Positions 31,527-49,023 of a DNA stretch of 64,000 nucleotides are shown here, in pieces (position 1 is the first letter of the stretch; each line of letters begins with the position of its first letter). The stretch is from positions 62,001 to 126,000 of the IMG/VR virus record IMGVR_UViG_3300030107_006644, one strand, 5' to 3'. Under the pieces are notes generated by a model. It saw only the letters and a program-made list of their open reading frames with translations, had not been told where the DNA came from and did not search any database. The position numbers and the translations under genes were made by a program.

Positions 31527-34500
31527 ATGTCAAACACACTTTCAGAATTAAGAGGCCGGTTTAACTTCGTATCTCCGGGTATTTACGTTAACGAGGTCGA
31601 CCAGTCCCAGCCATCGGTTGAGCGGTTGGCCCAAGGCCCGGTTATTATTGGCCGATTCCCCAAGGGCCCCATGATGCGCCCCGTGGTTGTTAAATCCAAA
31701 GCACAATTTATGAGCCTTTTTGGCGCTCCACACCCCGGCGGAGCCGGCGGCGATCCGTGGAGAGGCGATGCTCATGGCGGCCCAACGTATGCCGCATATG
31801 CTGCTGAGGCGCATTTACATTCTGCTGGCGGTACTGCTCCTGCTACAATTTTTAGACTTGCAGGCGAGAAGGCTTCTGGAGCAACTGGCAACTATTCCGC
31901 TGCCGGCTGGACAACCCGAGCTAGTTCTGGTGCCCAAGTTAATCCGAATGCTGCTGTCGCTAGCAACGGTGGGGCTTACGGACTGTTCGTCATGGGTCCC
32001 CCAATGGCCGGCCTAGGCAGCGACTCGCTTAACTTCGGAAGCCTTGGGTGGCAAGGCAGCCACGCCGTCACCGGCACGCTAGCCGCTGTCTTTTATCTTA
32101 CCGAGGGCTCGATTCAGCTTGTTGGTAACGGATATAGTCCCGATGGCACCGTGGGGGATCAGACAGCCAGTCTTGGCTCTCTCATTAGGTCTCACTCGCA
32201 TGTTGGCGGCACCTATTATGATGGTGTCGGTGCGGATGCAGCCCCGTGCACATTTAAATTTAGGGTTTTAAACTCTGCGGGAACTGAAGTTTCGAATCAT
32301 ATTGCATCCTTCATCCCAAGTGCCGATCTGGACTCCTACTCCGGCATAGCCGGCGCACGCGATTCGTTCAACTGCGATCCAACCAAGACCAACGCCAGCA
32401 TCAATACTTCGGCGAACACCAAGACTTACTGGCTTGGCGAGACGTATCAGCAAAGTGTCAAGGACATGGTTTCGCTGACCGGATCCAACGCTGCGGATGC
32501 GGGCCAGCAATGGGGAGTGCTTGTAGCACTACACGACGGTGCCAATAACTTTGCAGATCATCGCGAAGATTGGCAAAACCCTTCAACAGGCTGGTTCTTT
32601 TCGCAGGACCAAGGTGCGTATGCAAGCTATCATGTAAATAACATGGAGAAATTGTTTAAGTTTCACGCGCTTGATCACGGCGAATGGGCCCAAAATAACT
32701 TGCGCATTACGATTAGCAACATTGAGCAATATACCAGCAGCAAGTATAAATATGGAAGTTTCGATGTATCAGTTGAGTCGCTTTTCGGAAGAGAGAGTAG
32801 CGTATCGGTTATCGAAACCTTTTCAAATTGTAACTTAGATAGAAATTCGCCCAACTACATTTGTAAGAAGATTGGTGATAGATACTTAGAGTGGAATTCG
32901 GATGCCAATACCGGCGGGCAACATATTGACAAGGGTAGCGAACAAAACAAATCTAGCTACATTCGTGTAGAAGTTTCGGATCTAGTGAAGTACGGCGATC
33001 CCTCGACACTCCTGCCTTGGGGTGTTTATGGGCCCTCGCGCCTTCGTTCTTGGCATGCCAACTCTGGCTCGTCTGGATTCTTTTCTAGCTCTGCCGGCGT
33101 ATTCAACCCGAGTGAGGTGTCGTGTGAAGGTGTCGCTGGATTCTATGCCACGGGAGATGCTTCGGGAATGCCCGCAACGCACCCCGTTGACTCTACCGTT
33201 TCTGGTGTCGCTGCAACCGCAACAATTACTTTTACTGGCAGTCAAACTGTCAACAGGCTTATAACCATTACATCAGCGGACGGTACCGCGAGAACCTATA
33301 CAGGTAAAACTACAGGAACTCCGGGCTCCAACACCTTTGATTGTAACAATGGTGCCGCAGTTTGCGCGACATCGTTAATGGCTGCGATAAACAACGCCGC
33401 CGGCCATTCGGGCAAAATAACTGCTACGAACCCATCATCGGGCGTCGTACTGTTAACACAAGATGTGGTCGGAATAGCCGGAAACACGACTATAACTAAC
33501 GATTTCGACGCCGCAACTGTGCCGGCAGGATTCTCCGGCGGCTCTGCAGGTGAAATCTGGTTCGGTGCCAGTGGAGCTTCACAGATGAACGGCGCCAACT
33601 TTAAGATTGAATACCCCAGTGTTCGCTTGGTAGCTACAGCCTCTATTGGCGGATCCGGCGATAGATATCACAATAGATTTGGTATCGACTGGTCAGACTA
33701 TACTTTATCAGGCGGAAACCACAAGATGACAAGCACCAATGGTGAAGCAGAACTCAGTGTTGTTGATGCGTTACGCCGACTTCCTAAAGCGGTCGCTGGT
33801 AATAGCCCAGATGATTCTGGCAATGTTGAATACTCTTGGGTGTTCACTCTGGATGACATCGTTTGTAGTAACTCTACCGATACCTCTCCAATTGGCACCT
33901 ATACTTCCGGCTCTCGCGCCGGAGGTACAAGCTATACGGCAGCTAGCGGATCGTCTGCTCTTCTTGATATCGGAGATGGCAAGGGATTCCACCAGTTCAG
34001 CACATGTCTAGCTGGCGGACACGATGGTCTCGATATCTGCGAGAGAGAGCCTTTCAGAAACACGCTTTTGGATGACGCTAGCGGAGACAAAACCGTTATT
34101 GCCATGTATAATACGATGGTCCGTGCGCTAGATACCGTTAAGGATCCGGAGTATGTTGAGTGTAATATTATAACTGCCCCCGGTCTTACGGAAAACAACC
34201 TTACCGACATGTTGATTTCGCATTGCGAAAGTCGCGGTGACGCGTTGGGTATCATTGATGTTGACGGCGGATATATTCCGGGCGGTACTGAGCAGGCCAC
34301 AATCTCGCGAGGCTCCGTAAAGGCTGTCTGGCAGAATATGCGAGACCGCACACTGGACTCAAGCTATGGCTGCGCCTACTATCCGTGGGTTCAAGTTAGA
34401 AGTTCTCAAAACAAGGATAGCGTTTGGGTTCCACCCTCTGTCGTAGCCTTGGGAACAATGGCGTCCTCAACAAAGGCTTCGAAAGTCTGGTTTGCTCCCG

Positions 34501-35021
34501 CAGGGTTTACTCGCGGCGGATTGGATTCTGTCGGAACGCGCGCAGGCTCAGCAGGCCTTAAGGTAATGGATGTTAGAGATCGCCTTACTTCCACACAGAG
34601 AGATAGAATGTACGAGAATCGGATTAATCCAATTGCCAAGTTCCCAGCAGAAGGAATCGTGGTGTTCGGACAAAAGACTTTACAAGTTCCGGCCTCCGCC
34701 TTGGACCGGATCAACGTTCGCAGACTTCTGCTGCACGTCAAGAAGCAGACCTCTATCATTGCTGCTACAACCATGTTTAGCCCGAACGATGCAACTACTT
34801 GGGCCGCTTTCAAGGGGTCGATGGATTCGTTCTTAGACGACATTAAGAGCGAGTACGGCCTTCAAGATTACAAGGTTGTGTTAGATGAGACTACCACGAC
34901 GGACGACTTGATCGATGCCAACGTTCTATACGCTCAAGTATACCTGAAGCCGACCAAGGCAATCGAATTTATCCTTGTCGACTTTATCGTTACAAGCCAA
35001 GGAGCATCTTTCGACGATTAA
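31527..35021 (+). CDS. gp18: contractile tail sheath protein
   Basis: VSPGIYVNEVD, YYPWV, WFAPAGFTRG, INPIAKF..EGIVVFGQKTL, RINVRRLL, KPTKAIEFI. Confidence 0.96.
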   Translation: MSNTLSELRGRFNFVSPGIYVNEVDQSQPSVERLAQGPVIIGRFPKGPMMRPVVVKSKAQFMSLFGAPHPGGAGGDPWRGDAHGGPTYAAYAAEAHLHSAGGTAPATIFRLAGEKASGATGNYSAAGWTTRASSGAQVNPNAAVASNGGAYGLFVMGPPMAGLGSDSLNFGSLGWQGSHAVTGTLAAVFYLTEGSIQLVGNGYSPDGTVGDQTASLGSLIRSHSHVGGTYYDGVGADAAPCTFKFRVLNSAGTEVSNHIASFIPSADLDSYSGIAGARDSFNCDPTKTNASINTSANTKTYWLGETYQQSVKDMVSLTGSNAADAGQQWGVLVALHDGANNFADHREDWQNPSTGWFFSQDQGAYASYHVNNMEKLFKFHALDHGEWAQNNLRITISNIEQYTSSKYKYGSFDVSVESLFGRESSVSVIETFSNCNLDRNSPNYICKKIGDRYLEWNSDANTGGQHIDKGSEQNKSSYIRVEVSDLVKYGDPSTLLPWGVYGPSRLRSWHANSGSSGFFSSSAGVFNPSEVSCEGVAGFYATGDASGMPATHPVDSTVSGVAATATITFTGSQTVNRLITITSADGTARTYTGKTTGTPGSNTFDCNNGAAVCATSLMAAINNAAGHSGKITATNPSSGVVLLTQDVVGIAGNTTITNDFDAATVPAGFSGGSAGEIWFGASGASQMNGANFKIEYPSVRLVATASIGGSGDRYHNRFGIDWSDYTLSGGNHKMTSTNGEAELSVVDALRRLPKAVAGNSPDDSGNVEYSWVFTLDDIVCSNSTDTSPIGTYTSGSRAGGTSYTAASGSSALLDIGDGKGFHQFSTCLAGGHDGLDICEREPFRNTLLDDASGDKTVIAMYNTMVRALDTVKDPEYVECNIITAPGLTENNLTDMLISHCESRGDALGIIDVDGGYIPGGTEQATISRGSVKAVWQNMRDRTLDSSYGCAYYPWVQVRSSQNKDSVWVPPSVVALGTMASSTKASKVWFAPAGFTRGGLDSVGTRAGSAGLKVMDVRDRLTSTQRDRMYENRINPIAKFPAEGIVVFGQKTLQVPASALDRINVRRLLLHVKKQTSIIAATTMFSPNDATTWAAFKGSMDSFLDDIKSEYGLQDYKVVLDETTTTDDLIDANVLYAQVYLKPTKAIEFILVDFIVTSQGASFDD

Positions 35022-35071
35022 AGATGAAAAACAAAATGCAAGACTATATACAACAAGGAGACATACTATAA

Positions 35072-35752
35072 ATGGCTAAATTTTGGAGAAACGCAACAGC
35101 AGAGCCCAAGAGAGCATATCGATGGTTTATTACCTTTGGCGGCCTTGGGACCAACACGTCAGGTGGGAACGCCGGGGCCTCGGACAATCCCGCTGTGGCA
35201 ACCACAGACTTAACTTATGCGGTTAAGCGTGTTGACAAGCCATCAATCAGTATTTCTGAAACAGAGCACACCTTTATTAATCACAAGTTTTACTATCCCG
35301 GCCGAGTCGACTGGTCTGACGTTTCTGTCAGTTTTGTTGATGTCGTCGGTGCGGGTTCTGCAACTGATAGTGTTCTTGTTGCACTGGCCGCAGCAGGGTA
35401 TGACGTGCCTTCGAACGCTAGTGCACCCGCGTCAAACACCGACACGGCGGGTGCCGCGAATTTTACCACCGTCAGCAAGCATTCGATGTCGACAGCTCTC
35501 GGCTCTGTTATAATTACTCAAGTTAATTCCGAAGGTATACCCGTTGAGACGTGGACCTTGAACAACCCTTGGATCAAAAGCATCAATGTTGGTTCTCTCG
35601 ACTACGGCAGTGAGGAACTTCTATCGGTCGATATCAGCTTGAGGTACGACTGGGCTACTTTTGCAAGACCATCAGGCGCCAAAGGTGTCGCCCCCGACGA
35701 TACCGATACTCCAGATGCAGGCGGCGGAGAACTCTTCACCCTTTGGGAATAA
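35072..35752 (+). CDS. gp19: tail tube protein
   Basis: EPKRAYRW, YYPGRVDW, ETWTLNNPWIKSINVGSLDY, LRYDWA; follows the sheath gene. Confidence 0.9.
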   Translation: MAKFWRNATAEPKRAYRWFITFGGLGTNTSGGNAGASDNPAVATTDLTYAVKRVDKPSISISETEHTFINHKFYYPGRVDWSDVSVSFVDVVGAGSATDSVLVALAAAGYDVPSNASAPASNTDTAGAANFTTVSKHSMSTALGSVIITQVNSEGIPVETWTLNNPWIKSINVGSLDYGSEELLSVDISLRYDWATFARPSGAKGVAPDDTDTPDAGGGELFTLWE

Positions 35753-35841: not shown

Positions 35842-36708
35842 ATGGCTAGAAATAATGAGTTAAGAACCGGCGCCAGTGCGGCCGGAGACTCTACGGGTGC
35901 AGTATCTGAAGCGGTTGCAAATGCAAGCCCGCTGTCTTTTGTTGTGCCAACGGAGTTTGTTGAGTTGCCAAGCAGGGGGAGATACTATCCAGAAGATCAC
36001 CCGCTATGCAATCAGGAAGTGGTAGAGATTCGCCACATGACGGCAAAGGATGAAGATATATTAACATCAGCATCGCTCTTGAAGAAAGGCTTGGCAATTG
36101 ATAGGCTGATCGCTAGCATATTGGTGGATAAAAACATAAGTCCAGATACGCTACTCATCGGAGATAGGAATGCCATTCTGCTACAAGCTAGAATCCACGC
36201 ATACACATCTAATTATGGTGTAACTGTTGGCTGTCCAGCATGCGGAGAGTCTTCAGAGCAAACTTTCGACTTAGCAGAGTGCGGCTTAAACTATGGAGAA
36301 GATTTGGGTGCTTTAACGGATGATATTTCGGGCCCAGATTCACAGAACATGTTTGATATCAGGCTACCCGTCACACAAGTCGTGGCTAAAGTTAGACTTC
36401 TTAATGCTGGCTTAGAGAAATCTATTGCAAATGAACAGGCAAGAAGGCAGAAGATGAAGCTCCCAGAAGCACCGGTGACCTTTCAACTGAAGCAAATTAT
36501 TTACTCGCTAAACGGCGAAACAGATCGAAACCAAGTTAACACCTTCATCGAGTCGATGCCGACTGCAGATACGCATTATTTGCGCGCATCATACAACAAG
36601 TTGGTGCCAAATGTGGATATGACGCAGAGCTTTACGTGTCCAAACTGTGAGAAGGAGTCACAACTGGAGGTTCCGTTTACTGCGGAGTTTTTTTGGCCTA
36701 ACCGATGA
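35842..36708 (+). CDS. baseplate hub/tail assembly chaperone (T4 gp26-like)
   Basis: VELPSRG..Y, MTAKDEDIL, GDRNAIL, CPAC and CPNC, ends FFWPNR. Confidence 0.85.
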   Translation: MARNNELRTGASAAGDSTGAVSEAVANASPLSFVVPTEFVELPSRGRYYPEDHPLCNQEVVEIRHMTAKDEDILTSASLLKKGLAIDRLIASILVDKNISPDTLLIGDRNAILLQARIHAYTSNYGVTVGCPACGESSEQTFDLAECGLNYGEDLGALTDDISGPDSQNMFDIRLPVTQVVAKVRLLNAGLEKSIANEQARRQKMKLPEAPVTFQLKQIIYSLNGETDRNQVNTFIESMPTADTHYLRASYNKLVPNVDMTQSFTCPNCEKESQLEVPFTAEFFWPNR

Positions 36709-37364: not shown

Positions 37365-39701
37365 ATGAGCGGTGGAGGCGGTGGAGATCCCGGAGATATA
37401 CCAAGGTACGAAGAGCTAATAGAAGTAATCCAGCAGAGTGCGGATGAAGCGGACAGAGCCGCAGCGGCTTATGAGAGAATGTCGCAAACGTTGTCTAGCT
37501 CTTCTATGAAGGCTGAATATTTTGCGAAAGCAAACGAGCAGAACGTAAAGGCTATGGAAGCCAGCATTCAGGCTACTCAGCTTATGATCGAGGCTCTTGC
37601 CGAACAGGGTCAGGAAACCGCCGAACTAGAGCAAAAGCTTGCTGCCTACGAAGCTAGATTAAAGTCGTTAAAGGGAGAGACAGAAGCTGTTAATGCGCTC
37701 AATCAAGGCGCTAAAGACGGATTTAGAAGTTTGGCCGGCATGATTGGTATGTCGACAGACTCCAGTCAAAACTTTGTTTACCAGTTAGGGCTTATGACCA
37801 ATTCCTTGGTCGCAAACAGAAAAGAATTGATCCAAGCGCCGGCTATATTTAATGGTTTTGCCAGCGCCATGAACTCGGCAGCTAGCTGGATCGAACAAGG
37901 CTTTATTGTGTTGTTGAAGAAGGGGATAGATATAGTTCTCGACATGAACAGTGCCCAAATGACCTTTAATCGAACGATGGGCATCGCGGTAAGCCAACAA
38001 CAGCGATACGCAGATAGTATTAAGAGGACATCTAACTCGCTCTTGCTAGCCGGTGTCTCTGTTAGAGAGTCAGGTGAGGCGTGGAATCAGCTGTACACTA
38101 GCGTTACTCGTTTTTCGCATATGACTACCGAGATGCAAGAAGATTTGATGAGGACCACAGCTTTGCTGGAAAGAAACGGAATGGCCGCTCAACAAACCAC
38201 GCAATCTGTTGAAATGTTGTCAAGAGTTTATGGAATGACCGGAATGGAAGCAGCCCAGCAGATGCGAAATTTAAGAGATTTTGCAGAAGCTGCTCGAATC
38301 CCGCCGGAAATCATTTCTCGCGACTTTGCAGAGGCCAGTAGACAACTAGCTGTACATGGCAAGAGAATGGTGTCGGTATTTAAAGATTTGGAACTAGCGG
38401 CCAAAGGTACTGGTATCGGAATTCAACAGCTATTGTCGATTACTTCGCGATTTGATACGTTTGAGGGAGCCGCTGAAGCTGCCGGTCGATTGAACGCTAT
38501 TTTAGGCAGAGACTTGTTCAATTCGCTTGACATGTTAATGACGGTAGATCCGACAGAGAGATTTCGTCGCTTACGTCAAGGTATTTTGCAAGCTGCTGGA
38601 AGCTTTCAGCAGTTAAGTTATTATGAAAAGCGCGCGATTGCAGACGCAGCAGGGTTAGAAGACGTAGCTCAGCTAGCAATGCTTATGAGCGGTAGGTTAG
38701 AACAGAGTGCCGGCGCAATGGGCCAAAATGCAATGTCAGCCGAAGACCTAGCAAAGAGAACCGAAAATCTCGCTTCACTGCAAGAGAAATTTGCCAATAC
38801 GTTGTCTGCTCTTGCGCCGCAATTCCATGCGTTCATGGACTGGCTTGTAAACATGACCTCAAATACGAGAGAGTTCAAAGAATGGATCGAGAGTTGGATC
38901 CAGACTGGAATCAAGTGGTATGGAGGACTTAAGATAGGCGCTGCGATATTGTCTCTTTATAGGCTGAGGCTAATGGCGGTTACTGCTGCAGCAGGACAAG
39001 CTACAATGGCCACGCGAGGTCTTTCTTTGGCTATGGTAGGCGCCGGAGGACTGGGAGTCATGGGCCTCATGTGGGCAACTAAAAAGGTCAATGAAGCTTT
39101 TAATGAGCCCGGCTCGCCGTCCTTTTTGCAGAGCTTAGGGATCATAGGGCGAGAAGCCGGCAAATCGGCTACCCCACTCAGAAGCTTGGCATCAAGCATG
39201 GGGGAGATCGGCGCCCAAGTGGGAGCGATGCAGGTAGCCAGCAATCTTTCTATGGCTTTGCGCTCGCTTGAACAGGTTGATTCAACTGGCATAAGAGGAA
39301 TGGCAGCAGCGATTAGAGACGTAGCTTCAGCCATGAACGATATCGATCCAAATAAGAGTTTAGAGTTCCGAGCCACCATACAGGCCTTTGGCACGTCACA
39401 GATAGCACAGGCTGTTGCTGCAGCCAACAGTTTGCGAGATTCTGATGTGAACAGGATCAAAGATCTGGTTACACAGGCAAATGAGCTTGCCGCAGCCAGT
39501 AGAACTTCTGAAGGAGATCAGTTAAACGCTCTAGTTAGATCTGTAGCGCAGTTGGCTCAAGTGCAAGCCGGCGCCGGCGCAGCAGGCGGTGGTTATGCCG
39601 GCCCAAGCAAGGTCGAATCAGTGTTGAAGCTCGACGGTCGGACACTCGACAGGCACATTGTTAATGTTGTAAGCAGAAGATTCGGCAGCAGAGAAAGGTA
39701 G
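37365..39701 (+). CDS. tape measure protein
   Basis: Ala/Gly/Met-rich helical protein, FDTFEGAAEAAGRLNAILG, hydrophobic segments, C-terminal LKLDGRTL; after the chaperones. Confidence 0.8.
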   Translation: MSGGGGGDPGDIPRYEELIEVIQQSADEADRAAAAYERMSQTLSSSSMKAEYFAKANEQNVKAMEASIQATQLMIEALAEQGQETAELEQKLAAYEARLKSLKGETEAVNALNQGAKDGFRSLAGMIGMSTDSSQNFVYQLGLMTNSLVANRKELIQAPAIFNGFASAMNSAASWIEQGFIVLLKKGIDIVLDMNSAQMTFNRTMGIAVSQQQRYADSIKRTSNSLLLAGVSVRESGEAWNQLYTSVTRFSHMTTEMQEDLMRTTALLERNGMAAQQTTQSVEMLSRVYGMTGMEAAQQMRNLRDFAEAARIPPEIISRDFAEASRQLAVHGKRMVSVFKDLELAAKGTGIGIQQLLSITSRFDTFEGAAEAAGRLNAILGRDLFNSLDMLMTVDPTERFRRLRQGILQAAGSFQQLSYYEKRAIADAAGLEDVAQLAMLMSGRLEQSAGAMGQNAMSAEDLAKRTENLASLQEKFANTLSALAPQFHAFMDWLVNMTSNTREFKEWIESWIQTGIKWYGGLKIGAAILSLYRLRLMAVTAAAGQATMATRGLSLAMVGAGGLGVMGLMWATKKVNEAFNEPGSPSFLQSLGIIGREAGKSATPLRSLASSMGEIGAQVGAMQVASNLSMALRSLEQVDSTGIRGMAAAIRDVASAMNDIDPNKSLEFRATIQAFGTSQIAQAVAAANSLRDSDVNRIKDLVTQANELAAASRTSEGDQLNALVRSVAQLAQVQAGAGAAGGGYAGPSKVESVLKLDGRTLDRHIVNVVSRRFGSRER

Positions 39702-39736
39702 ATAAAGAATTTATCAAATCTCTATTTATAGTTATA

Positions 39737-40519
39737 ATGGCTTTACTTGTACCAAAATTAATAACGCTGAAGTGCAACTTGGAAGTTGTCCACCCGGCAC
39801 CGTTCGGATGGGATAGTACAACCAGAACCATAGCGAAAACTCACGGCACAAGCGAGGCTTTTAAAAGGTTTCCTTATGGTCTAGACTATTCCGACGAGGA
39901 TACATATGGCGAAACAACTCACTCAAAAACTTTAGAAAAAATGAGCCAAGGCGCCGAGCAAGACAACTCAGAAGAACCTATTGGCACAAATGTAACTGAC
40001 GAACTCAAAGTGACTTATGAAGCTGGTACTTTTGGCAACGGCGACCCGCACCAATCGACTTACGCAAATACCACAGGCCTGCACCTTTCTTTCAAACATA
40101 TCTCCTCTGGACTGACTGTGTTCTTTAAAGCTTTTCTAACTGATATGAGCGATAACTATTCTATTACGTGGAGTGAAGACGCCGCTATAGGCAGAATGGA
40201 TCCCCTTGTATCTTATCAGGGGATCAGAAGAACGGTTTCTATAACATGGGACCTGCCATCGTGGGATGTCAACGAGGGGGTGGAGAATTTACAGAAGTGC
40301 ACTAACTTGTTTAAAATGTTGTACCCCATGTATCAGGAGCACGGCCACTCTTTGTCGATGTTTTCTCCGCCCATGTTGGGAATTAAGATGTCTAATTTGG
40401 TGGCCTTTCATGACAGTCCTTTTGGCGGTTCCGGAGGATATCTCACAGGTACAGTTCAGGGGTTTGACTTTTCTCCCAACTTAGATGTTGGGTTTTGGGA
40501 TCCGAATGTAGATGAGTAG
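39737..40519 (+). CDS. baseplate/tail-tube initiator-like protein, circularly permuted
   Basis: FKAFLTDMSDNYSITW...GRMDP...RTVSITWDLP, LYP, PPMLGIKMSNL. Confidence 0.7.
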   Translation: MALLVPKLITLKCNLEVVHPAPFGWDSTTRTIAKTHGTSEAFKRFPYGLDYSDEDTYGETTHSKTLEKMSQGAEQDNSEEPIGTNVTDELKVTYEAGTFGNGDPHQSTYANTTGLHLSFKHISSGLTVFFKAFLTDMSDNYSITWSEDAAIGRMDPLVSYQGIRRTVSITWDLPSWDVNEGVENLQKCTNLFKMLYPMYQEHGHSLSMFSPPMLGIKMSNLVAFHDSPFGGSGGYLTGTVQGFDFSPNLDVGFWDPNVDE

Positions 40520-40532
40520 GAGATTAACTTAA

Positions 40533-41591
40533 ATGGGACAAGAAACAACCCCGCTTTTCTCGACAACGGTCATGAATCAGACGGGCTCTTCAGGGACAGC
40601 CGAGACCAATTATGCGAACAACAAAGGCTTTTACATAACGTTTAATAGCATGTTCGTTGCAGGCCGCGTGGACTTTAAAGCTTATCTCAACCAATATCAT
40701 GATAACTTTACCAGCGACTGGTCATCCGAAATACCATACGGCCGCGTGGACAGTATCAAAACCTTTAATAGAACAACTAGAATGATAGATATATCATTTT
40801 CAATACCAGCATATACAGCCGAAGAGGCCATACAAAACTTGGCAAAAGTTTCCGCCTTGATCAAGATGGTTTACCCTTCATATGAGAACAGGGCGTGGGG
40901 AACCACAAAAGGTCACACCGGCACCGGTGATGACGCACTCTCGACCACAGTATTGGCATCCAGTCGCACGACAAACGCATCTAACGATAGGTTCTGCTTG
41001 TCGGCGCCTCCACTAATAACGGTCAAGTTCGCAAACCTAATTAAGTCGATCCGACCAGATACCACTGCCTTACCCGGCGGGCCCGAGTTGGAAAAGACAT
41101 TTCTGGAAGGCAAAATGGACGGTATAATATCTGCAGTCACCAACTTATCTGTCAACCCGCGCGTCGACGCCGGCTTTTTTCACCTTAAAGATGGTACAGG
41201 GTGGATGTACCCCAAGGTGATAGATGTTGCTGTACAGTTTAATGTTCTTCATCAGGTGTCTCCGGGAATAGCTGCTGCTGATTTTACAACTGCAGCCGCC
41301 GCAGCTACTTATGGAGATCTTTATGGAGTCGGATACGGTAAAGTCGACGGCACCAAGGGAGATCCGGCCTATTCTGAGACTCCAGCACTTTCAATTGCTG
41401 GGGCGAGAGCGGCCCTTGAGGCAGCTGGAAGGAACAAGGCAATGGTTACAAACCCTGATGTCGCTGGGCCCACCCAAACCCCCCCTCCCGGCGTTTCAAC
41501 TGCGGCCGGCACTACTCCCGGCGGACACAGCACCGATGACTATGTGCAAATTGCCGGCGACAAAAACGAAGACGGTCAGGGCAGCCCCTAG
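40533..41591 (+). CDS. baseplate/tail-tube initiator-like protein (paralogue of the previous gene)
   Basis: FKAYLNQYHDNFTSDW...GRVD...RMIDISFSIP, VYP, PPLITVKFANL, YPKVIDVAVQFNVLH. Confidence 0.7.
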   Translation: MGQETTPLFSTTVMNQTGSSGTAETNYANNKGFYITFNSMFVAGRVDFKAYLNQYHDNFTSDWSSEIPYGRVDSIKTFNRTTRMIDISFSIPAYTAEEAIQNLAKVSALIKMVYPSYENRAWGTTKGHTGTGDDALSTTVLASSRTTNASNDRFCLSAPPLITVKFANLIKSIRPDTTALPGGPELEKTFLEGKMDGIISAVTNLSVNPRVDAGFFHLKDGTGWMYPKVIDVAVQFNVLHQVSPGIAAADFTTAAAAATYGDLYGVGYGKVDGTKGDPAYSETPALSIAGARAALEAAGRNKAMVTNPDVAGPTQTPPPGVSTAAGTTPGGHSTDDYVQIAGDKNEDGQGSP

Positions 41592-41636: not shown

Positions 41637-41981
41637 GTGGCAAAATCAAGAAACAGTAATCGTGGAATTCTCAACAATCAGCTAGAGAGGGATGTAGATT
41701 TGCGAATTGCGCGAGGCAGGCCAAACCTACGGCACTATATGTCTCCTCGCATGAAGTATCCATCAAAAGCTTTGAGAGATTCTCTTCATAAGACTGTGCA
41801 TGTGTGGTCTTCTGGAGATAGATACTGGAAGTTAGCAGCGAGATACTATAGCGACCCGACTCTTTGGTGGGTAATCGCATGGTATAACTTAAAGCCAACT
41901 GATGCTCATTGTTCGATAGGTGACAACATCATAATCCCGGGCCCCGTTGGCAAAATAATTCAATACTACTCTACCTCTTAG
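41637..41981 (+). CDS. LysM-like baseplate wedge protein (gp53-like)
   Basis: GDRYWKLAARYYSDPTLWWVIAWYN...IGDNIIIP. Confidence 0.85.
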   Translation: MAKSRNSNRGILNNQLERDVDLRIARGRPNLRHYMSPRMKYPSKALRDSLHKTVHVWSSGDRYWKLAARYYSDPTLWWVIAWYNLKPTDAHCSIGDNIIIPGPVGKIIQYYSTS

Positions 41982-42021: not shown

Positions 42022-45000
42022 ATGAGCATACATGAAGGCCAGCAATATACAGTAGCCCAAATTGCAGAAGAGAGAAGAACACAAGAGCAGTGCTTCTTGC
42101 TGCATTGGCTAGAAATAATTTCTGCCGCAAACAGACACATAAACTATTCCGGAAACAAGGACGATCTCGTCGCCGGCACCCCCGGAAACAGTGCGTCCTT
42201 CTATCCCATTGATGGAGATCCGGCAAAACTAGTTAGTGTGCTCACTGGAAAGATGGGCCTAGGTCCGCTCTTAACGCTGTCTCCATATAAGATGTCGTAC
42301 TTGGTACCCAAGGTGAGGCTGTATAAGGTTTTCAAAGAATACACGCCACGCACTGACACTGATCCCGGCGGAGCCCTCGAAAAAGAGTATGACGTTGAGT
42401 TTATATTTCCAGACAACATTTTAGGTATCTCGCAATATGATTACGCATCGGGAGAAAGCGGCTTTTCGAAAATAGAGCGCATGCTGACAAACAAGGTTGG
42501 TCGTGGTACCGGCGTGGGTCTACAAGAGTTTAGTTGGGAGTATCAGGGCACAAACCCAGCCGAAGCAACAAACCAACTTCTTTCCACCATATCTTTAACC
42601 TTTTCAGATCTACAAGAACTCTATGTTAAGAGAGGTCCGGTACCCGTTTCTTCTTATAAGGATGGCACGGGTCAAATAGTGAGCGAATCTCTGGAAAACG
42701 TATACTATAGCTACATCGATCTGATAATGCGAACTGTGGCTGGCGATAACGATGCTAGTGCCAGTGAGAATGCTACGGATAAGTGTATGAGGTATCGTTC
42801 TTTTGATCCAAAGTACTATGAAATTAAAGCTTTGGTTGGCTGGGCATACAAAGACGGGCACCCTTTTACAGTAGAGGAAAGAGAAGCGCTGGAATCAAGC
42901 AATATAGGACTTTACTTAACTTTGGTTGACCACGTTATATCGTTTCAAGAAGATGGTACCGTGAAGCTTGATTGCACATACCGTGCAGCGGTTGAGGGAC
43001 TTTTAGATAGCGATTTTACAGATCTGTTTACCTCTCCATACGAGCGCGCACGCCAAGCACAGATAGAGGCAGCGATGAATGCTATTCGTTCCGGCTCTTC
43101 CGCAGACGTCGATGAGGGCGTTGGCAGTACTAGCAACAATGCAGGGGGCGGAAGTGGAGGCACTGGACGATACACCGCTACCTCTACCGAGACGCCAGAA
43201 CAGGGAGCTACGCAGTCGGAACAGAATTCTCGCGCACTCTCCGCATTACAGGACGAACTAGAGCGCCTTAGAAACGACGCTCGCGGAATGGGATTCCATC
43301 AACTGGCGCAATGGCTAGCAAATTCGCCTGCCAACTCCACACTCGCTTATGAGCGCAGGTCTGAAGATTATATGCCGCTTCATGCTGGTGGAGACTCCTC
43401 CGCCCGGACAGCTACCACAAACGCGCTCAATCAAATGCCTCGAATTAAATATATTATGGCCAAGCCTTTGGCTGTTGGCGCAACCGGCGCCGCCGACGAG
43501 GATGTGACAGTTCGACTTGAGCAAGGAGATCGTTGGGGCGATGAAACCGTTACCGAAGCACTTGATAAGCAGGCGGTACGTTATGATACTTCAGGAAATG
43601 ATCGCGCTTTGGGCCCGGGCGAACACGGCTCTATCGATCCACGGACTAGAGATATGGGCCAAGCAACAGACTGGGTTAGAGAGGCGCGAGAAGAAGATGC
43701 AAGCGATAACAGTTCAACTCCTGCAGATAGCGAGGTGGGCTTTTACCAACTAGGCACAGATCCGCAAGCCCCAATCGATCAAGCTGGTATTTTGACATCG
43801 ACCGAAGTCGGCGGCGACTATAACCTCACCGCAACTGCAGGAATAGGCGATTCTCTTGTCGACGCGTCGGCCGACTCGCGCAGATATAGTCAGAACCACG
43901 AGTCTTCGAACTCCACGATTGAGTATACAGAGGACTTTGAACAGCGGCTAGATCTACAAGCCACGCGCCCAGTGCTAGTGGAGTTCACAGACTCTGCCGG
44001 CAACGCGACATCGCGACTAGTTTATCCAACTGCATTTGTTTACTATGGGGACATCATAGATTGGGCATGTCGCAAGGCTTTGTGGATCAAGCCATACGAT
44101 GCCGATTCCCAATACCCCGGCGCCGCAGGAGCGGGCGCCCCGCAGACTTCAGTTACAGCTGCGAGAGCAGAAGATGAGCGCGTCGGAGCCACAGAAACAG
44201 CCCAATCTGCCGGCTGGACACAGGGTGAAGATGGGCCGGCGCCCTCTTTGCCTCCCGTTGATGAGTTTAGAAATGCTGCCCGTGAAGGTGAGCAAAGACT
44301 GAAGCAGATTAAGGTTATATTGGGTTCGCTGCGATACTATAACCCTTCAAGCGGAGAATATCAAAACGTCAATTTGGCCGATATCCCTGTTTCGTACAAC
44401 ATGTTTGCTACATGGTTTATGAACAGAATTATGCGCCCGGGCGTTTATTCATATAGTTTGCGTACATTTATCAAGGAAACAATGCAGACGCTTATCTTGG
44501 ATGTTCTTGGGGGCACTAGCTGTATCGATGATACTGCTTATGAAGATCCCAACGGCGGAGGCTCCAGCGCAACTTTTACTAGAACCGTATTTGATATCGG
44601 CATGCTCAATGTGCAGGTGCCAAATCGCTCGATGGGTGCTGACAAGCCATCTGTAGATCCGATTAGCTATATATGGAGCGAAGAGTACAAAGCCGGCCAA
44701 TTCGGAACCTCAAATGCGGTGCATCAAAACGCGAACTACAGACTTAGCCTTGACAGGATATCGACATATATTGGGAAGAATGCTGACAACACAGACAGAG
44801 CCTTTCCCGAAGGTTTGACTTACTGCGATGAAAGCTACATCGGAAACATGACGACATATTACATTGTTTATGCAAAGGGGTACAACGTTAAAGATTTGCG
44901 AGGCGTGGAAACAAAGGAGGAAGCCGATGCCCTGTTTCCTGATGAGGGGGGTTCAGCAAAGTATGCAGATAATGAGAAAGGAATATATCACTTCTACATA

Positions 45001-45591
45001 GGACAGAATGCCGGCATGGTTAAGTCTGTATCTTTTAACAGAACCGATCAGGCGTACTTAGCGGAAGCTAGAATGATGGCCGGCGGCCATTTCGGATATG
45101 GTCAGTTGCGCGGCCGATATGAGGCTAGCATAATCATGCATGGGAACACATTCTTTTTGCCCGGCCAGATGATCTATATAAATCCAACGACAATTGGGAG
45201 CGGAAACATGTACGAAAGACGGTTGGATGCTCTCCTTCTTGGCTTGGGTGGCTATTATGTTGTTTTGGGAGTAGACAGTTCGATCACTGAAGACACGTTT
45301 GAAACCAGATTACGCGCCGTGTGGCACGGGATGGGTTCGTACTTTGATGGAAACGATTGGGTGGTGTTGAACTGCGGAGAGAGCACCGAGGACAACAACA
45401 GCATTAGTACATCAACTGCGTATGATATGGCCGAGACCGCAATGCAAGGATCTTCAGGCACGCATCAATCGATATATCCGTCGCCAGATGGAGATGATAA
45501 CGAGCGTGGAGCCACACGCGGAGTTCATGGAGACACCGGACTTCAGGATCACCAGCATCCGGGACACAACTCTAGAGAGGTAGACGAATAA
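42022..45591 (+). CDS. large baseplate hub-like protein (gp27/VgrG-type C-terminus)
   Basis: C-terminal YEASIIMHGNTFFLPGQMIYI...GGYYVVLGV...FETRLRA; position after the LysM gene. Confidence 0.65.
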   Translation: MSIHEGQQYTVAQIAEERRTQEQCFLLHWLEIISAANRHINYSGNKDDLVAGTPGNSASFYPIDGDPAKLVSVLTGKMGLGPLLTLSPYKMSYLVPKVRLYKVFKEYTPRTDTDPGGALEKEYDVEFIFPDNILGISQYDYASGESGFSKIERMLTNKVGRGTGVGLQEFSWEYQGTNPAEATNQLLSTISLTFSDLQELYVKRGPVPVSSYKDGTGQIVSESLENVYYSYIDLIMRTVAGDNDASASENATDKCMRYRSFDPKYYEIKALVGWAYKDGHPFTVEEREALESSNIGLYLTLVDHVISFQEDGTVKLDCTYRAAVEGLLDSDFTDLFTSPYERARQAQIEAAMNAIRSGSSADVDEGVGSTSNNAGGGSGGTGRYTATSTETPEQGATQSEQNSRALSALQDELERLRNDARGMGFHQLAQWLANSPANSTLAYERRSEDYMPLHAGGDSSARTATTNALNQMPRIKYIMAKPLAVGATGAADEDVTVRLEQGDRWGDETVTEALDKQAVRYDTSGNDRALGPGEHGSIDPRTRDMGQATDWVREAREEDASDNSSTPADSEVGFYQLGTDPQAPIDQAGILTSTEVGGDYNLTATAGIGDSLVDASADSRRYSQNHESSNSTIEYTEDFEQRLDLQATRPVLVEFTDSAGNATSRLVYPTAFVYYGDIIDWACRKALWIKPYDADSQYPGAAGAGAPQTSVTAARAEDERVGATETAQSAGWTQGEDGPAPSLPPVDEFRNAAREGEQRLKQIKVILGSLRYYNPSSGEYQNVNLADIPVSYNMFATWFMNRIMRPGVYSYSLRTFIKETMQTLILDVLGGTSCIDDTAYEDPNGGGSSATFTRTVFDIGMLNVQVPNRSMGADKPSVDPISYIWSEEYKAGQFGTSNAVHQNANYRLSLDRISTYIGKNADNTDRAFPEGLTYCDESYIGNMTTYYIVYAKGYNVKDLRGVETKEEADALFPDEGGSAKYADNEKGIYHFYIGQNAGMVKSVSFNRTDQAYLAEARMMAGGHFGYGQLRGRYEASIIMHGNTFFLPGQMIYINPTTIGSGNMYERRLDALLLGLGGYYVVLGVDSSITEDTFETRLRAVWHGMGSYFDGNDWVVLNCGESTEDNNSISTSTAYDMAETAMQGSSGTHQSIYPSPDGDDNERGATRGVHGDTGLQDHQHPGHNSREVDE

Positions 45592-45639: not shown

Positions 45640-47001
45640 ATGAGCGATAAAACAAACTACAATGATGCAGAGATGTGGCCAAAGCATGAATATGATTTCC
45701 GCGCAGCCAACTCCCAAAGCACGCGAACGTTGTTTGATCAGCGCAAGAGCTATCGTGACAGGGCTCTTTATGATGGGGCACAATTGTCCTTTCACCAAGG
45801 TACGATTGACTTGCTGGCTGATGAAAAGATGACCTTCTATGGTCGCATCGATAACGACGACACGCCTAGGTACCTTAAATTTTCGCATATGAAGTCGTTC
45901 GACCTTTCGGTTCTTGAGCCCGGCGCTGGGCTCTCCGGAAAGATCCATGCGATTAATTTTGCTGTTGATGCGTTTACAGACATGGTAGCCGAACTTCGAA
46001 AAATGGTTACCGTATCGCATTGCGGACTGCAGGAAGGAGATCTCTCTCTAAAACCCAAACAAGGGAGAGTTGACAGCTACGAATCAGCACAGAGAATATT
46101 TGGAACACAAGTGTTGAGAGACTTCAACAATTATTCAACTCGCCCAACACAGGAGTTGACCGGCGCCGGTAAGCTTGATAAGATTAGAACTTTCGATGAT
46201 CTGGTTAAGCATTTTCTTGAATTTTTGGATTCGAAAAGCGGACTCTCGATGCCGGTCACACACACGGGCACCATGCTACACCCAGCCGGCTCTATACAGA
46301 TGACCGGCTTGGCGATCTTGCTAGAGGTCGACGACCAGTCGAACGATGCAAACAAAACAACGTTCTTGAATAGTGAGTTTTTCGACCTATATCGCAGATT
46401 GGCTATCAAGTACGGGTTCCTTGTTGACCGCAATTGCCCATGGCGACTGATTGCAGATATACAATCGCCGCAAATGAAAAAGTATATGGACAACTATGAG
46501 ATCACGGTAAACAACTTGTTCGATGAATGCTATATTAAAGCTTATGATTTAGATCTTGAACTTATCAAGAAGCAACTTCTTTCCTTGTGGAACACCTTGG
46601 CGACCAACTATCCAAAATATTCGTTGCGAAGCAATGGTTGCGGCTCCGGATTAGCCCATAGAGAGAGGCTTACGGCCGACGAACTCGACAAGACATACGG
46701 TGATGCTTATTGGATTCCAGTTTATGTCAAACTTAGAAACGCAGAGGCTCAGTCGAACCTGAGTAAGGTTTCGATAGCAAGGATTCAAAAACATGCAGCA
46801 GAGTTAACAAAAGCACTTGACATATCGGCCGCAATGGAGTATATTAATAGTCAGTTCCAGCGATTTTTCCTCAAACAGAGAATGGGTGGGAGAAAATTCA
46901 TGCCTTTTAACAACTTGGAAGCGGAAGAACAAAGTGACCAAGAACTCAAACGACAAATCGCTATAAGTTCCGGAGGAAATGGTGCTATTTCAGGTTATTG
47001 A
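45640..47001 (+). CDS. hypothetical (probably virion) protein
   Basis: 453 aa; FYGRID, NFAVDAF, YGFLVDRNCPWRLIAD; late-like motif directly upstream. Confidence 0.7.
   Translation: MSDKTNYNDAEMWPKHEYDFRAANSQSTRTLFDQRKSYRDRALYDGAQLSFHQGTIDLLADEKMTFYGRIDNDDTPRYLKFSHMKSFDLSVLEPGAGLSGKIHAINFAVDAFTDMVAELRKMVTVSHCGLQEGDLSLKPKQGRVDSYESAQRIFGTQVLRDFNNYSTRPTQELTGAGKLDKIRTFDDLVKHFLEFLDSKSGLSMPVTHTGTMLHPAGSIQMTGLAILLEVDDQSNDANKTTFLNSEFFDLYRRLAIKYGFLVDRNCPWRLIADIQSPQMKKYMDNYEITVNNLFDECYIKAYDLDLELIKKQLLSLWNTLATNYPKYSLRSNGCGSGLAHRERLTADELDKTYGDAYWIPVYVKLRNAEAQSNLSKVSIARIQKHAAELTKALDISAAMEYINSQFQRFFLKQRMGGRKFMPFNNLEAEEQSDQELKRQIAISSGGNGAISGY
46817..46845 (+). promoter_or_regulatory. sigma70-like promoter for polA-like gene (within upstream CDS)
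   Basis: TTGACA-17-TATATT. Confidence 0.7.
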
Positions 47002-48169: not shown

Positions 48170-49023
48170 TGAATCTAATAGCACTAGGAGATACAGCAAC
48201 TAAAATAGCGGAGGCCTTTTTACAATACCCTCAGTACAAGGTGCGCACAATTAGTTCGTCGCAGAATACCAAGACGCCCCATTATAAGTTGTCTAGTTTT
48301 TCAACACCGGAAGAGTATGAGGAGCGTTGCCCCATGCAAGAGATAGGATTCTTTCTTGGAAACGTTGAAGCTGAAACAATCTTTGTTACATGCGGTGCAG
48401 ATTATGAGTCTGCGTGCTCTTTGCGTATCCTTGAGCAGGTGACCAAGGGATCCTCTGTAAAGGTTTTATATATTGAACCAGAGGTAGAGACTTTGCAGGA
48501 TACTGCAATCTTATTAGAGAGAAGTGTCCGGTCGGTTCTGCAGGAGTATGCTCGTTCCGGAGTGTTCAGTGAAATAGTGCTTGTCTCTGTGCCTCAAGCC
48601 CGCTTAGTACTCGGAGATGTGTCGATCTTGGAGTACGAACAAAAGCTAAATGAATTGGTGGCATCCACGATTCACATGATAAACGTTTTTAGGCATTCGG
48701 ATCCGATATACAATAGCCAACTTAAACATAAGGATGTTTCAAGGATCTCTACTATTGGCATGGCCTCGCTTAAAAATAATGAAGAAAGTTTGCTTTACCC
48801 CCTTGACAACGTGAAGGAAAAGAGATATATTTATTCTATATCCAAAGATTCGTTGGAGAACGACAACAAGCTTATGAGCAAGATAACAGAGCAGGTCAAA
48901 AATTCTGCAGAAAAAGATAAAATAAAAGCTGGATTTGAGGTATACTCATCAGAGTACGATGACAATTATGTGTACGTGGTAGCGCGTACATCTTTTATAC
49001 AAGAACAGTGGGAGAAAGCATGA
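48169..49023 (+). CDS. divergent tubulin/FtsZ-superfamily protein
   Basis: MNLIALGDTATKIAEAF (T1 loop-like), IFVTCG, VLYIEP, IVLVS, LNELVASTI follow the FtsZ fold order; GGGTG motif absent. Confidence 0.6.
   Translation: MNLIALGDTATKIAEAFLQYPQYKVRTISSSQNTKTPHYKLSSFSTPEEYEERCPMQEIGFFLGNVEAETIFVTCGADYESACSLRILEQVTKGSSVKVLYIEPEVETLQDTAILLERSVRSVLQEYARSGVFSEIVLVSVPQARLVLGDVSILEYEQKLNELVASTIHMINVFRHSDPIYNSQLKHKDVSRISTIGMASLKNNEESLLYPLDNVKEKRYIYSISKDSLENDNKLMSKITEQVKNSAEKDKIKAGFEVYSSEYDDNYVYVVARTSFIQEQWEKA
48803..48831 (+). promoter_or_regulatory. sigma70-like promoter (intragenic)
   Basis: TTGACA-17-TATATT upstream of 49020. Confidence 0.65.

What the first reader, a model, noticed from the sequence alone, without database searches (positions are those of the whole stretch)
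39737..41591. Tandem baseplate paralogues related by circular permutation
The two ORFs share a core in the same order (FKA.L..DN...W / GR.D / R.I.I....P / NL.K...L.KM.YP / PP....K..NL / P..D.GF). In 40533 the core continues into WMYPKVIDVAVQFNVLHQVSPG. ORF 39737 stops just after PNLDVGFWDP but begins with MALLVPKLITLKCNLEVVHPAPFGW, which resembles that missing final strand. One paralogue therefore appears to have moved its last beta-strand to the N-terminus. An alternative is strand donation between subunits, which could chain the two rings together.
Basis: partly seen in the sequence, partly recalled or inferred. Interest (0 to 1): 0.7.

Follow-up and report, generated by a model that had tools for sequence, protein, structure and literature searches.

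The report
Circularly permuted tail-tube initiator paralogue
In an uncultured 205-kb marine T4-like phage, one of two neighbouring baseplate-to-tube adaptor genes has moved its last ~48 residues to the front, and related phages carry the single, doubled and fused forms of this gene that such a rearrangement would pass through.

Summary

- **The genes.** ORF1 (39737-40519, 260 aa) and ORF2 (40533-41591, 352 aa) are paralogues of a large, unnamed family with at least 2,730 cluster representatives. The family has the tail-tube fold. Its best structural matches are tube-initiator proteins of contractile systems: Afp7/Pvc7-type chains, phage P1, and a T4 5iv5 chain that is probably gp48.
- **The permutation.** ORF1 residues 4-76 match the C-terminal part of the family profile (E 1.2e-10; 2.7e-11 with a profile built only from unpermuted members). 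The match covers the last beta-strand and the GW and FPYG motifs. ORF1 ends where that segment normally begins. A poorly conserved linker (residues 49-99) joins the old termini.
- **Distribution.** Of 253 family proteins classified, 7 have this order and they form one clade. Wherever context is known, a permuted gene is followed by an unpermuted one.
- **Other forms.** Related phages carry, between tape measure and LysM gene, one unpermuted gene, two tandem unpermuted genes (L017), or one fused two-domain gene (L012).
- **3D placement is only partly shown.** AlphaFold left the N-segment unplaced. A split-chain prediction (0.62 versus 0.00 for controls) put residues 3-19 beside the expected strands.

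Whether the strand inserts into its own or a neighbouring subunit, and how the rings are arranged, is unresolved.

The parts
39737..40519 (+). ORF1, 260 aa: circularly permuted tube-initiator paralogue (order: C-segment, linker, core)
   Evidence: Six homologues (P0001-P0005 and P0109) show the same architecture.
39737..39880 (+). ORF1 residues 1-48: relocated C-terminal segment. Last beta-strand of the tube fold at residues 4-19 (39746-39793), GW at 24-25, FPYG at 45-48.
   Evidence: The family C-terminal consensus is LYPKxIxLSCxFTVLHxHxLGW, then about 12 residues, then FPYG. Profile hits E 1.2e-10 and 2.7e-11. M1, P6, K7, H19, G24, W25 and F45-G48 are invariant in the clade. Residues 3-19 dock on the core in the split-chain prediction.
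39881..40033 (+). ORF1 residues 49-99: linker joining the old C-terminus to the old N-terminus. Acidic, variable, with indels.
   Evidence: 25% identity across the clade, against 52% for the N-segment and 57% for the core. pLDDT mostly below 55. Indels in alignments A1 and A5.
40034..40507 (+). ORF1 residues 100-257: tube-fold core lacking the final strand. Ends in the loop after P..D.GF.
   Evidence: Matches family profile positions 27-185, E 2e-62. pLDDT 83-95 over most of the core. VIA-align to 6j0n_b Z 8.1, model 112-254 to chain 6-141; ORF2 reaches chain 161 on the same target.
40533..41591 (+). ORF2, 352 aa: unpermuted tube-initiator paralogue. Core at residues 18-219 (40584-41189), C-segment at 223-252 (41199-41288) with the last strand at 229-239 (41217-41249), then a low-complexity Ala/Gly/Pro-rich tail at 253-352.
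   Evidence: strand 229-239 falls in blocks with mean pLDDT about 91; Foldseek E 1.5e-6 to CIS tube initiators; Z 11.9-10.1.
37365..39701 (+). 778-aa tape-measure-like protein directly upstream (the position of T4 gp29)
   Evidence: Size, coiled-coil-type weak hits and synteny with the T4 order 26-51-27-28-29-48-54. The same neighbour is seen in all related loci.
41637..41981 (+). 114-aa LysM-like baseplate protein directly downstream (gp53-like)
   Evidence: phrog_7145 'baseplate wedge subunit' E 6.4e-8; weak LysM Pfam hit. Conserved downstream neighbour in the related loci examined.
35842..36708 (+). gp26-like baseplate hub subunit (context)
   Evidence: PF12322 E 2.8e-16; phrog_150 E 5.3e-19.
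31527..35752 (+). Tail sheath (31527-35021, 1164 aa) and gp19-like tail tube (35072-35752, 226 aa) (context)
   Evidence: PF17482 and PF04984 for the sheath. PF06841 for the tube at E 1e-4, 22.6 bits, below Pfam's 28.2-bit cut-off.

Best explanation
ORF1 and ORF2 are two paralogues of the tail-tube-fold 'tube initiator'. This protein makes the ring or rings that join the baseplate hub to the first ring of the tail tube, as gp48/gp54 do in T4 and Afp7/Pvc7 do in contractile injection systems.

ORF2 has the ancestral order: core, then C-terminal segment. ORF1 is a circular permutant. The last ~48 residues of the ancestral protein now open the protein. They comprise the final beta-strand, which sits beside three core strands and the helix, plus the GW and FPYG tail. 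A variable linker of about 50 residues bridges the old termini. The chain stops in the surface loop that formerly preceded the last strand.

The most likely origin (inferred) is permutation by duplication: tandem copies were fused in frame, then the 5' part of the first copy and the 3' part of the second were lost, next to a further intact copy. The most likely function (inferred) is that the N-terminal strand folds back into the vacant slot of an ORF1 core, so that ORF1 still forms a tube-like ring. Together with ORF2 this would give this phage lineage a two-component hub-to-tube adaptor, where most relatives use one protein.

Shown: homology, permuted order, fold class, synteny, and the distribution of architectures. 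Inferred: ring formation, whether insertion is in cis or in trans, ring order, and the evolutionary route.
For: Homology and order
- Core homology of the two ORFs: E 1e-19.
- The ORF1-family profile finds 2,730 relatives. Most top hits have two matched stretches.
- In 72 of 72 re-examined cases, ORF1 profile positions ~4-30 match a stretch lying a median of 5 residues after the core match.
- Own-genome search with a mostly unpermuted profile: ORF1 N-terminus matches model positions 177-250 (E 1.2e-10) and ORF1 core matches 27-185.
- C-segment HMM from unpermuted members only: ORF1 4-76, 2.7e-11.
- The C-segment lies before the core in 7 proteins (one clade, SH-aLRT 94-97), after it in 246, and in both places in none.

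Fold
- ORF2 model against CIS and phage tube initiators: Foldseek 1.5e-6, VIA Z up to 11.9. T4 chain 5iv5_BE, probably gp48, Z 10.1.
- The ORF1 core matches the same targets but stops 16-25 target residues earlier.

Placement
- Split-chain prediction: ipSAE 0.62 against 0.00 for the best of 3 controls. That mark was reached by 58 of 80 solved complexes and 2 of 110 mismatched pairs. Because my own alignments were used, these calibration counts hold only roughly.
- Residues 3-19 touch ORF1 164-175, 213-216 and 236-248. These correspond to ORF2 strands 82-93, 161-164 and 198-210.

Selection
- The N-segment is 52% conserved and the linker 25%.

Evolutionary series at the same slot between tape measure and LysM gene
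- A single gene (L001, L006, L013 and others).
- Two tandem unpermuted genes (L017).
- A fused two-domain gene, P0173 in L012.
- Permuted plus unpermuted genes (window, L003, L004/5).
Against: - The AlphaFold2 monomer model of ORF1 did not place residues 1-50 (pLDDT 36-48, no strand). The 3D equivalence therefore rests on a split-chain ESMFold2 prediction in which the partner's own fold is uncertain (pLDDT 46-48). That output lists contact residues, not pairs or coordinates.
- No virion or expression data exist for this uncultured phage.
- There is no sequence-level link to T4 gp48 or gp54 (hhalign E 0.25 and 0.52) and no Pfam or PHROG hit. The 'tube initiator' assignment rests on fold and synteny.
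- The fused (L012) and tandem (L017) forms are independent duplications, not direct ancestors.
- The sister relation of the ORF1 and ORF2 clades is unresolved (support 37).
- The proposed route needs at least three copies or two rounds of duplication, and no DNA remnants survive. Only 35 and 13 bases flank ORF1.
Confidence: 0.8

Rival explanations
1. The permutation is the same, but the N-terminal strand is donated in trans. The ~80-residue connection would let each ORF1 subunit insert its strand into the vacant slot of the neighbouring ORF1 subunit. That gives a strand-swapped, interlocked ring. Less likely, the strand goes into another baseplate protein.
For: AlphaFold did not fold the strand back in the monomer. 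The split-chain test shows that the strand binds the core as a separate chain, which fits trans as well as cis. The linker is long and unconstrained.
Against: Nothing tested here tells trans from cis. ORF2 keeps its own well-predicted last strand, so ORF2 has no vacant slot and cross-ring donation into it is unlikely.
Confidence: 0.25
2. ORF1 and ORF2 do not form two stacked homohexameric rings. They form one mixed ring, for example three of each alternating, which would match the six-fold tube to a three-fold hub.
For: A relative encodes a single fused two-domain protein at the same slot (P0173). From my own knowledge, fused tube domains such as T4 gp27 and T5 pb6 form pseudo-hexamers from trimers.
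Against: The closest solved analogues use separate stacked rings (T4 gp48 and gp54, Afp7 with Afp5; general knowledge and the entries). No oligomer model could be run here.
Confidence: 0.25
3. The N-terminal resemblance is chance or convergence of amphipathic beta-strands, or ORF1 is an assembly or gene-calling artefact or a decaying duplicate.
For: The pairwise BLAST for the strand alone gives E 0.36. A 23-column HMM in HMMER local mode did not pick it up. There is no Shine-Dalgarno motif before ORF1.
Against: Profile E-values of 1.2e-10 and 2.7e-11 cover about 70 residues with three separate motifs in the right order and spacing. The same architecture, with an invariant N-terminus, occurs in six further proteins down to 41% identity, from ENA, JGI and Logan assemblies. 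The reading frame is intact and the linker-versus-strand conservation contrast points to selection.
Confidence: 0.03

Closest known systems
Tube-initiator / tube-baseplate adaptor proteins of contractile injection systems (Afp7, Pvc7, Cis7-type chains: PDB 6rao_G, 6j0n_b, 9qgl_7A, 7b5h_AK, 7aeb_M) and of phages (P1 9vzk_2, A-1(L) 8kea_R, pyocin R2 6u5b_g)
   Same: The same tail-tube fold covers the whole ORF2 domain: VIA Z 9.2-11.9, Foldseek E 1.5e-6 to 4e-4. The ORF1 core matches the same chains at Z 6.6-8.1. The gene sits beside the tape measure and a LysM protein.
   Different: There is no detectable sequence similarity. ORF1 has the last strand at its N-terminus. The solved proteins align sequentially with ORF2 and so share its unpermuted order.
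Phage T4 gp48 (tail tube cap) and gp54 (tail tube initiator)
   Same: Two adjacent genes follow the tape-measure gene directly (T4 order 29-48-54). T4 chain 5iv5_BE, whose numbering runs to 357 and which is therefore probably gp48, aligns with ORF2 at Z 10.1 and with the ORF1 core at Z 7.5. The phage is T4-like in other genes: gp23, gp19, gp26, gp32 and a RecA-family recombinase.
   Different: hhalign gives E 0.25 and 0.52, and there are no Pfam hits. The duplication here is lineage-specific, since most relatives have one copy. It therefore appears independent of the gp48/gp54 pair. The aligned T4 chain has ORF2's unpermuted order.
Circular permutation by gene duplication and fusion (general mechanism, known for example from saposin/swaposin and DNA methyltransferases; from my own knowledge)
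   Same: The new termini lie in a variable surface loop. The old termini are joined by a linker. Tandem and fused duplicates of the same gene exist in relatives.
   Different: I found no paper describing such a case in the tail-tube fold. Here the permutant coexists with an unpermuted paralogue next to it.
Tandem-fused tube-domain proteins (T4 gp27, T5 pb6; from my own knowledge)
   Same: P0173 in L012 fuses two tube-initiator domains in one chain at the same genomic slot.
   Different: The window's genes are separate, and one is permuted rather than fused.

Membership tests
Tail-tube-fold tube initiator (Afp7 / Pvc7 / T4 gp48-gp54 class) | Tube fold (beta-sandwich with one flanking helix) spanning the domain | tested here: met
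   ORF2: Foldseek E 1.5e-6, probability 1.00; VIA Z 11.9-10.1 over model 21-245. ORF1 core: same targets at Z 8.1-6.6, Foldseek E about 1e-2, weaker because one strand is missing from the model.
Tail-tube-fold tube initiator (Afp7 / Pvc7 / T4 gp48-gp54 class) | Gene in the hub module, next to the tape measure and a LysM/baseplate gene | tested here: met
   Order is gp26-like, then a 115-aa ORF, tape measure, ORF1, ORF2, LysM. The same order is seen in the related loci examined. T4 order.
Tail-tube-fold tube initiator (Afp7 / Pvc7 / T4 gp48-gp54 class) | Forms a hexameric ring between hub/spike and the first tube ring in the virion | not testable with these tools
   The phage is uncultured, and no oligomer model with coordinates was available.
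T4 gp48 / gp54 sequence families | Significant sequence or profile similarity to gp48 or gp54 | tested here: not met
   No Pfam hit at E <= 0.1 for either ORF, and none at E <= 0.01 for the 103 relatives. hhalign of A3 against T4 gp48 gives E 0.25 and against gp54 E 0.52.
Circular permutant of its own family | N-terminal segment homologous to the C-terminal segment of unpermuted relatives, with the core in unchanged order | tested here: met
   E 1.2e-10; 2.7e-11; 72 of 72 two-stretch hits in permuted order; unique peak at z 6.2.
Circular permutant of its own family | That segment is absent from its usual C-terminal place | tested here: met
   ORF1 stops 8 residues after the GF of P..D.GF, and ORF2 starts 13 bases later. 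No protein has the C-segment on both sides. On shared targets the ORF1 core ends 16-25 residues earlier than ORF2's.
Circular permutant of its own family | The relocated segment occupies the same 3D position | tested here: inconclusive
   The AlphaFold monomer left residues 1-50 unplaced. In the split-chain prediction (ipSAE 0.62 vs best control 0.00; mark reached by 58/80 solved and 2/110 mismatched pairs, counts holding only roughly because my own alignments were used), residues 3-19 contact the equivalents of ORF2 strands 82-93, 161-164 and 198-210. No coordinates were available for a permutation-aware superposition.
Circular permutant of its own family | Duplicated or fused forms exist among relatives (permutation-by-duplication route) | tested here: met
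   L017 has two tandem unpermuted genes. L012 has the fused two-domain P0173. Both sit at the same slot, but both are independent duplications.

The most novel reading that the evidence does not exclude
The permutation may not be neutral. Putting the core-completing strand on a long N-terminal tether could let each ORF1 subunit insert it into its neighbour. That would make a strand-swapped, topologically interlocked ring at the hub-tube junction. Such a ring could act as a clasp that holds, or times the release of, the tube and tape measure. It would be a new assembly principle for the tube fold.
Probability: 0.2. Interest if true: 0.75.

Novelty: new variant of a known kind. Interest (0 to 1): 0.55.

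Why it matters
The tail-tube fold is the shared building block of phage tails, tailocins, type VI secretion systems and other contractile injection systems. Its known diversification is by duplication, fusion and domain insertion. I found no report of a circularly permuted member.

This locus gives a natural, statistically secure example. Related phages also carry the neighbouring evolutionary states (single, tandem and fused genes) at one syntenic slot. That makes it a compact model for how permutation by duplication arises in an obligate ring-forming protein.

It also shows that the number and form of tube-initiator components varies repeatedly within one phage group, with at least three independent duplications. 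It flags a large structural family, at least 2,730 cluster representatives, that no Pfam or PHROG model covers.

Tried and rejected
- **Short-profile HMMER search.** A 23-column last-strand HMM in local mode against the six-frame window did not rank ORF1 (E 11). Gapless scoring-matrix and profile-profile scans and longer profiles resolved this.
- **Databases with no hit for either ORF.** Pfam and PHROGs, PDB sequences by phmmer and by profile, and GenBank phages by blastn and tblastn. One weak hit was found for P0152.
- **hhalign to T4 gp48 and gp54.** Not significant.
- **AlphaFold2 monomer of ORF1.** An alignment deep on the core but only 7 rows on the N-segment left residues 1-101 at low confidence.
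- **IMG/VR scan with the ORF1 family.** It found 14 loci, all unpermuted. No further permuted members were found.
- **Tree.** It could not resolve whether the ORF1 and ORF2 clades are sisters (support 37).
- **Fused and tandem relatives as direct ancestors.** Rejected: the pairs in L012 and L017 each group with themselves.
- **Literature.** Four searches found only genome-level 'circular permutation'.
- **Chance and artefact explanations.** Rejected; see the rival explanations.
Full report
**1. What is there**

The window is bases 62001-126000 of a 205,517-bp IMG/VR virus record rated 100% complete. It encodes distant T4-like functions:
- a gp23-type capsid protein, a 1164-aa sheath and a gp19-like tube protein (the tube hit is below Pfam's cut-off);
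- a family-A DNA polymerase piece, gp32 and a RecA-family recombinase.

The finding lies in the baseplate-hub module. In order, this module holds:
- a gp26-like hub protein (35842-36708; PF12322 E 2.8e-16);
- a 115-aa ORF;
- a 778-aa tape-measure-like protein (37365-39701);
- ORF1 (39737-40519, 260 aa);
- ORF2 (40533-41591, 352 aa);
- a 114-aa LysM-like 'baseplate wedge' protein (phrog_7145);
- a 1189-aa protein.

This is the T4 order 26-51-27-28-29-48-54, with ORF1 and ORF2 in the place of genes 48 and 54.

**2. The observation**

BLASTP aligns ORF1 100-203 with ORF2 18-121 at 30% identity, E 1e-19. The strand resemblance taken alone is weak in a pairwise comparison (ORF1 4-19 vs ORF2 225-240, E 0.36), so I tested it with family information.

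ORF1 has only five close homologues (54-98% identity). Their first 27 residues are almost invariant. ORF2 belongs to a wide marine family of proteins mostly about 200-280 aa long (103 hits). The conserved C-terminal strand of that family reads YPKVISLSxxFNVLH.

Four tests agree:
- A gapless profile-profile scan of the ORF1-family N-terminus along the ORF2-family profile has one peak, exactly at that strand (z 6.2; next best 2.7).
- A scoring matrix of the strand, built without ORF2 and its close relatives, was scanned over all 54,508 six-frame positions of the window. It ranks ORF2's own strand first and ORF1 residues 5-19 second (z 5.9).
- An exhaustive HMMER search with the ORF1-family profile finds 2,730 representatives at E <= 1e-3, most with two matched stretches. 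Re-run locally, 72 of 149 representatives show a separate match of ORF1 profile positions ~4-30(45). In all 72 it lies just after the core match, with a median gap of 5 residues.
- This is the signature of a circular permutation, and the reverse searches confirm it. A profile dominated by unpermuted members matches ORF1's core to its positions 27-185 and ORF1's first ~75 residues to its positions 177-250, E 1.2e-10. A C-segment HMM built only from 141 unpermuted members hits ORF1 4-76 at 2.7e-11 and P0109 4-92 at 4e-12.

The family's C-terminal consensus is LYPKxIxLSCxFTVLHxHxLGW, then about 12 residues, then FPYG. ORF1 has the strand at residues 4-19, GW at 24-25 and FPYG at 45-48. All of these are invariant in its clade.

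**3. Anatomy of the permutant**

- ORF1 residues 1-48 are the old C-terminal segment.
- Residues 49-99 are an acidic linker full of indels. It is 25% conserved, against 52% for the N-segment and 57% for the core.
- Residues 100-257 are the core.
- The chain ends 8 residues after the GF of the P..D.GF motif. In ORF2 and its relatives this is the variable loop that precedes the last strand.

So the new termini lie in a loop and the old termini are joined by a linker, which is the textbook layout.

**4. Fold and family**

Neither ORF nor its relatives hit Pfam, PHROGs or PDB sequences.

The AlphaFold model of ORF2 has a core mostly at pLDDT 83-94, and the last strand (229-239) sits in blocks averaging about 91. 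By Foldseek it matches tube-initiator chains of contractile injection systems and phages:
- E 1.5e-6 to 1e-4: Anabaena CIS, PVC, AFP, AlgoCIS, cyanophage A-1(L) 'baseplate-initiators' and pyocin R2.

By VIA-align it matches:
- P1 baseplate, Z 11.9;
- the PVC baseplate chain 6j0n_b, Z 11.8;
- the AFP baseplate chain 6rao_G, Z 11.5;
- a T4 baseplate chain numbered 40-357, hence probably gp48, Z 10.1.

The ORF1 model has a good core but leaves residues 1-101 at low confidence. Its core hits the same chains at Z 8.1-6.6.

On every shared target, ORF1's aligned range stops 16-25 target residues before ORF2's:
- 6j0n_b: 141 versus 161;
- 6rao_G: 140 versus 157;
- T4 5iv5_BE: 336 versus 357;
- 6u5b_g: 269 versus 286.

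The strand that ORF1 lacks at its C-terminus is therefore a canonical element of the solved tube-initiator fold. Sequence-level membership in the T4 gp48 or gp54 families is not met (hhalign E 0.25 and 0.52).

**5. Does the N-terminal strand fill the slot?**

The score was 0.62 against 0.00 for the best of three controls. That mark was reached by 58 of 80 solved complexes and 2 of 110 mismatched pairs; because my own alignments were used, these counts hold only roughly. The partner's own fold is uncertain (pLDDT 46-48).

The confident interface is N-segment residues 3-19 against core residues 164-175, 213-216, 236-248 and 251-256, plus the helix. These map onto ORF2 strands 82-93, 161-164 and 198-210 and the following hairpin. 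From ORF2's strand order I infer that its last strand pairs with the 198-210 strand; this could not be checked without model coordinates.

It also cannot tell insertion into the same subunit from insertion into a neighbour.

**6. Relatives and history**

The results:
- 246 have the C-segment after the core;
- 7 have it before the core (ORF1, P0001-P0005 and P0109);
- none have it on both sides.

The seven form one clade (SH-aLRT 94-97). In each case with known context, an unpermuted gene of the ORF2 clade follows, and then the LysM gene (window; L003; L004/L005). The two clades branch in parallel: P0109 and the 282-aa protein of L003 (its neighbour) branch deep in their respective clades. This suggests the pair is old and inherited together.

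Elsewhere, the same slot between tape measure and LysM gene holds three other arrangements:
- one unpermuted gene (L001/2, L006/7, L013-16, L018-25);
- two separate unpermuted tandem genes (L017: 438 and 410 aa, 52% identical, sisters at support 99);
- one fused two-domain protein (P0173, 443 aa, in L012), with the order core, weak C-segment, a linker of about 70 residues, core, C-segment.

A cut of P0173 from its first C-segment to the end of its second core would have ORF1's architecture. These duplications are independent of the window's. They therefore illustrate the route rather than being its ancestors.

Whether the ORF1 and ORF2 clades are sisters is unresolved (support 37). The route to 'permuted plus intact' needs three copies or two rounds of duplication, and no remnants are left in the 35-base and 13-base spacers.

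**7. Mechanism proposed**

ORF1 and ORF2 are the tube-initiator components of this phage. ORF2 keeps the ancestral topology but has a degenerate C-segment (20 bits, against 38 for ORF1) and a low-complexity tail of about 100 residues. ORF1 keeps a canonical strand-GW-FPYG segment, but at its N-terminus.

I infer that the strand completes an ORF1 core, with cis somewhat more likely than trans. I also infer that the two proteins give a two-component junction, either stacked rings as with T4 gp48/gp54 or a mixed ring.

Rivals, with the confidence I give each:
- trans strand swap within the ORF1 ring: 0.25;
- a mixed ring: 0.25;
- chance or artefact: 0.03.

**8. Novelty**

The fold, the role and the general mechanism of permutation by duplication are all known. 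A circularly permuted tube-fold protein, and the full natural series of single, tandem, fused and permuted forms at one locus, was not found in four literature searches. I rate it a new variant of a known kind, with interest 0.55.

Noticed in passing
L012:6001-7332 (protein P0173): A natural fused two-domain tube-initiator protein (443 aa: core, weak C-segment, ~70-aa linker, core, C-segment). It sits in the same slot between tape measure and LysM gene and was seen on 3 contigs.
   Followed up: yes
L017:3896-6444: Two separate tandem unpermuted copies (438 and 410 aa, 52% identical) at the same slot. With L012 and the window's lineage, this gene has been duplicated at least three independent times.
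   Followed up: yes
window 41289-41588 (ORF2 residues 253-352): ORF2 and its close relatives carry a ~100-residue Ala/Gly/Pro/Thr-rich, low-confidence C-terminal tail with one predicted helix (288-299). The wider family lacks it. ORF2's GW/FPYG tail is degenerate; the motif YGDLYGVGYG stands in its place.
   Followed up: partly
window 39702-39736 and 40520-40532: ORF2 is preceded by a GGAG Shine-Dalgarno motif. ORF1 is preceded by an AT-rich 35-base spacer with no such motif, so how ORF1 translation starts is unclear.
   Followed up: no
window 40226-40279 (ORF1 residues 164-181) vs T4 gp48 residues 202-219 (L011): A local resemblance: RRTVSITWDLPS in ORF1 against NRTKVFTWDLTP in T4 gp48. hhalign aligns the family profile to this gp48 stretch, but it is not significant (E 0.25). 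It may be a trace of very remote homology to gp48.
   Followed up: partly
window 42022-45591: The 1189-aa protein after the LysM gene has no Pfam or PHROG hit. Its nearest ESM-Atlas clusters (scores 0.79-0.85, leads only) are large phage proteins carrying cell-wall hydrolase domains, so it may be a hub or spike-associated protein.
   Followed up: partly
window 46979-49023: The family-A DNA polymerase signal sits in a 396-aa ORF, followed by an overlapping 296-aa ORF. The related loci also show a ~400-aa PolA-like gene, so the polymerase may be split.
   Followed up: no
window 25606-27516 and 31527-35021: The gp23-type capsid protein is 636 aa, with the Pfam domain only in residues 351-620. The sheath is 1164 aa, against 964-976 aa in relatives with a single-copy initiator gene. 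Both carry large extra regions.
   Followed up: no
L001:845-2142: The 131-kb relative has two small genes (219 and 209 aa) between sheath and gp26-like gene, where the window and L006 have one (the tube). The extra gene was not identified.
   Followed up: no
whole family: A structural protein family with at least 2,730 cluster representatives at 50% identity has no Pfam or PHROG model. The three queries tried against the GenBank phage collection gave one weak hit, in an uncultured 484-kb phage record.
   Followed up: partly
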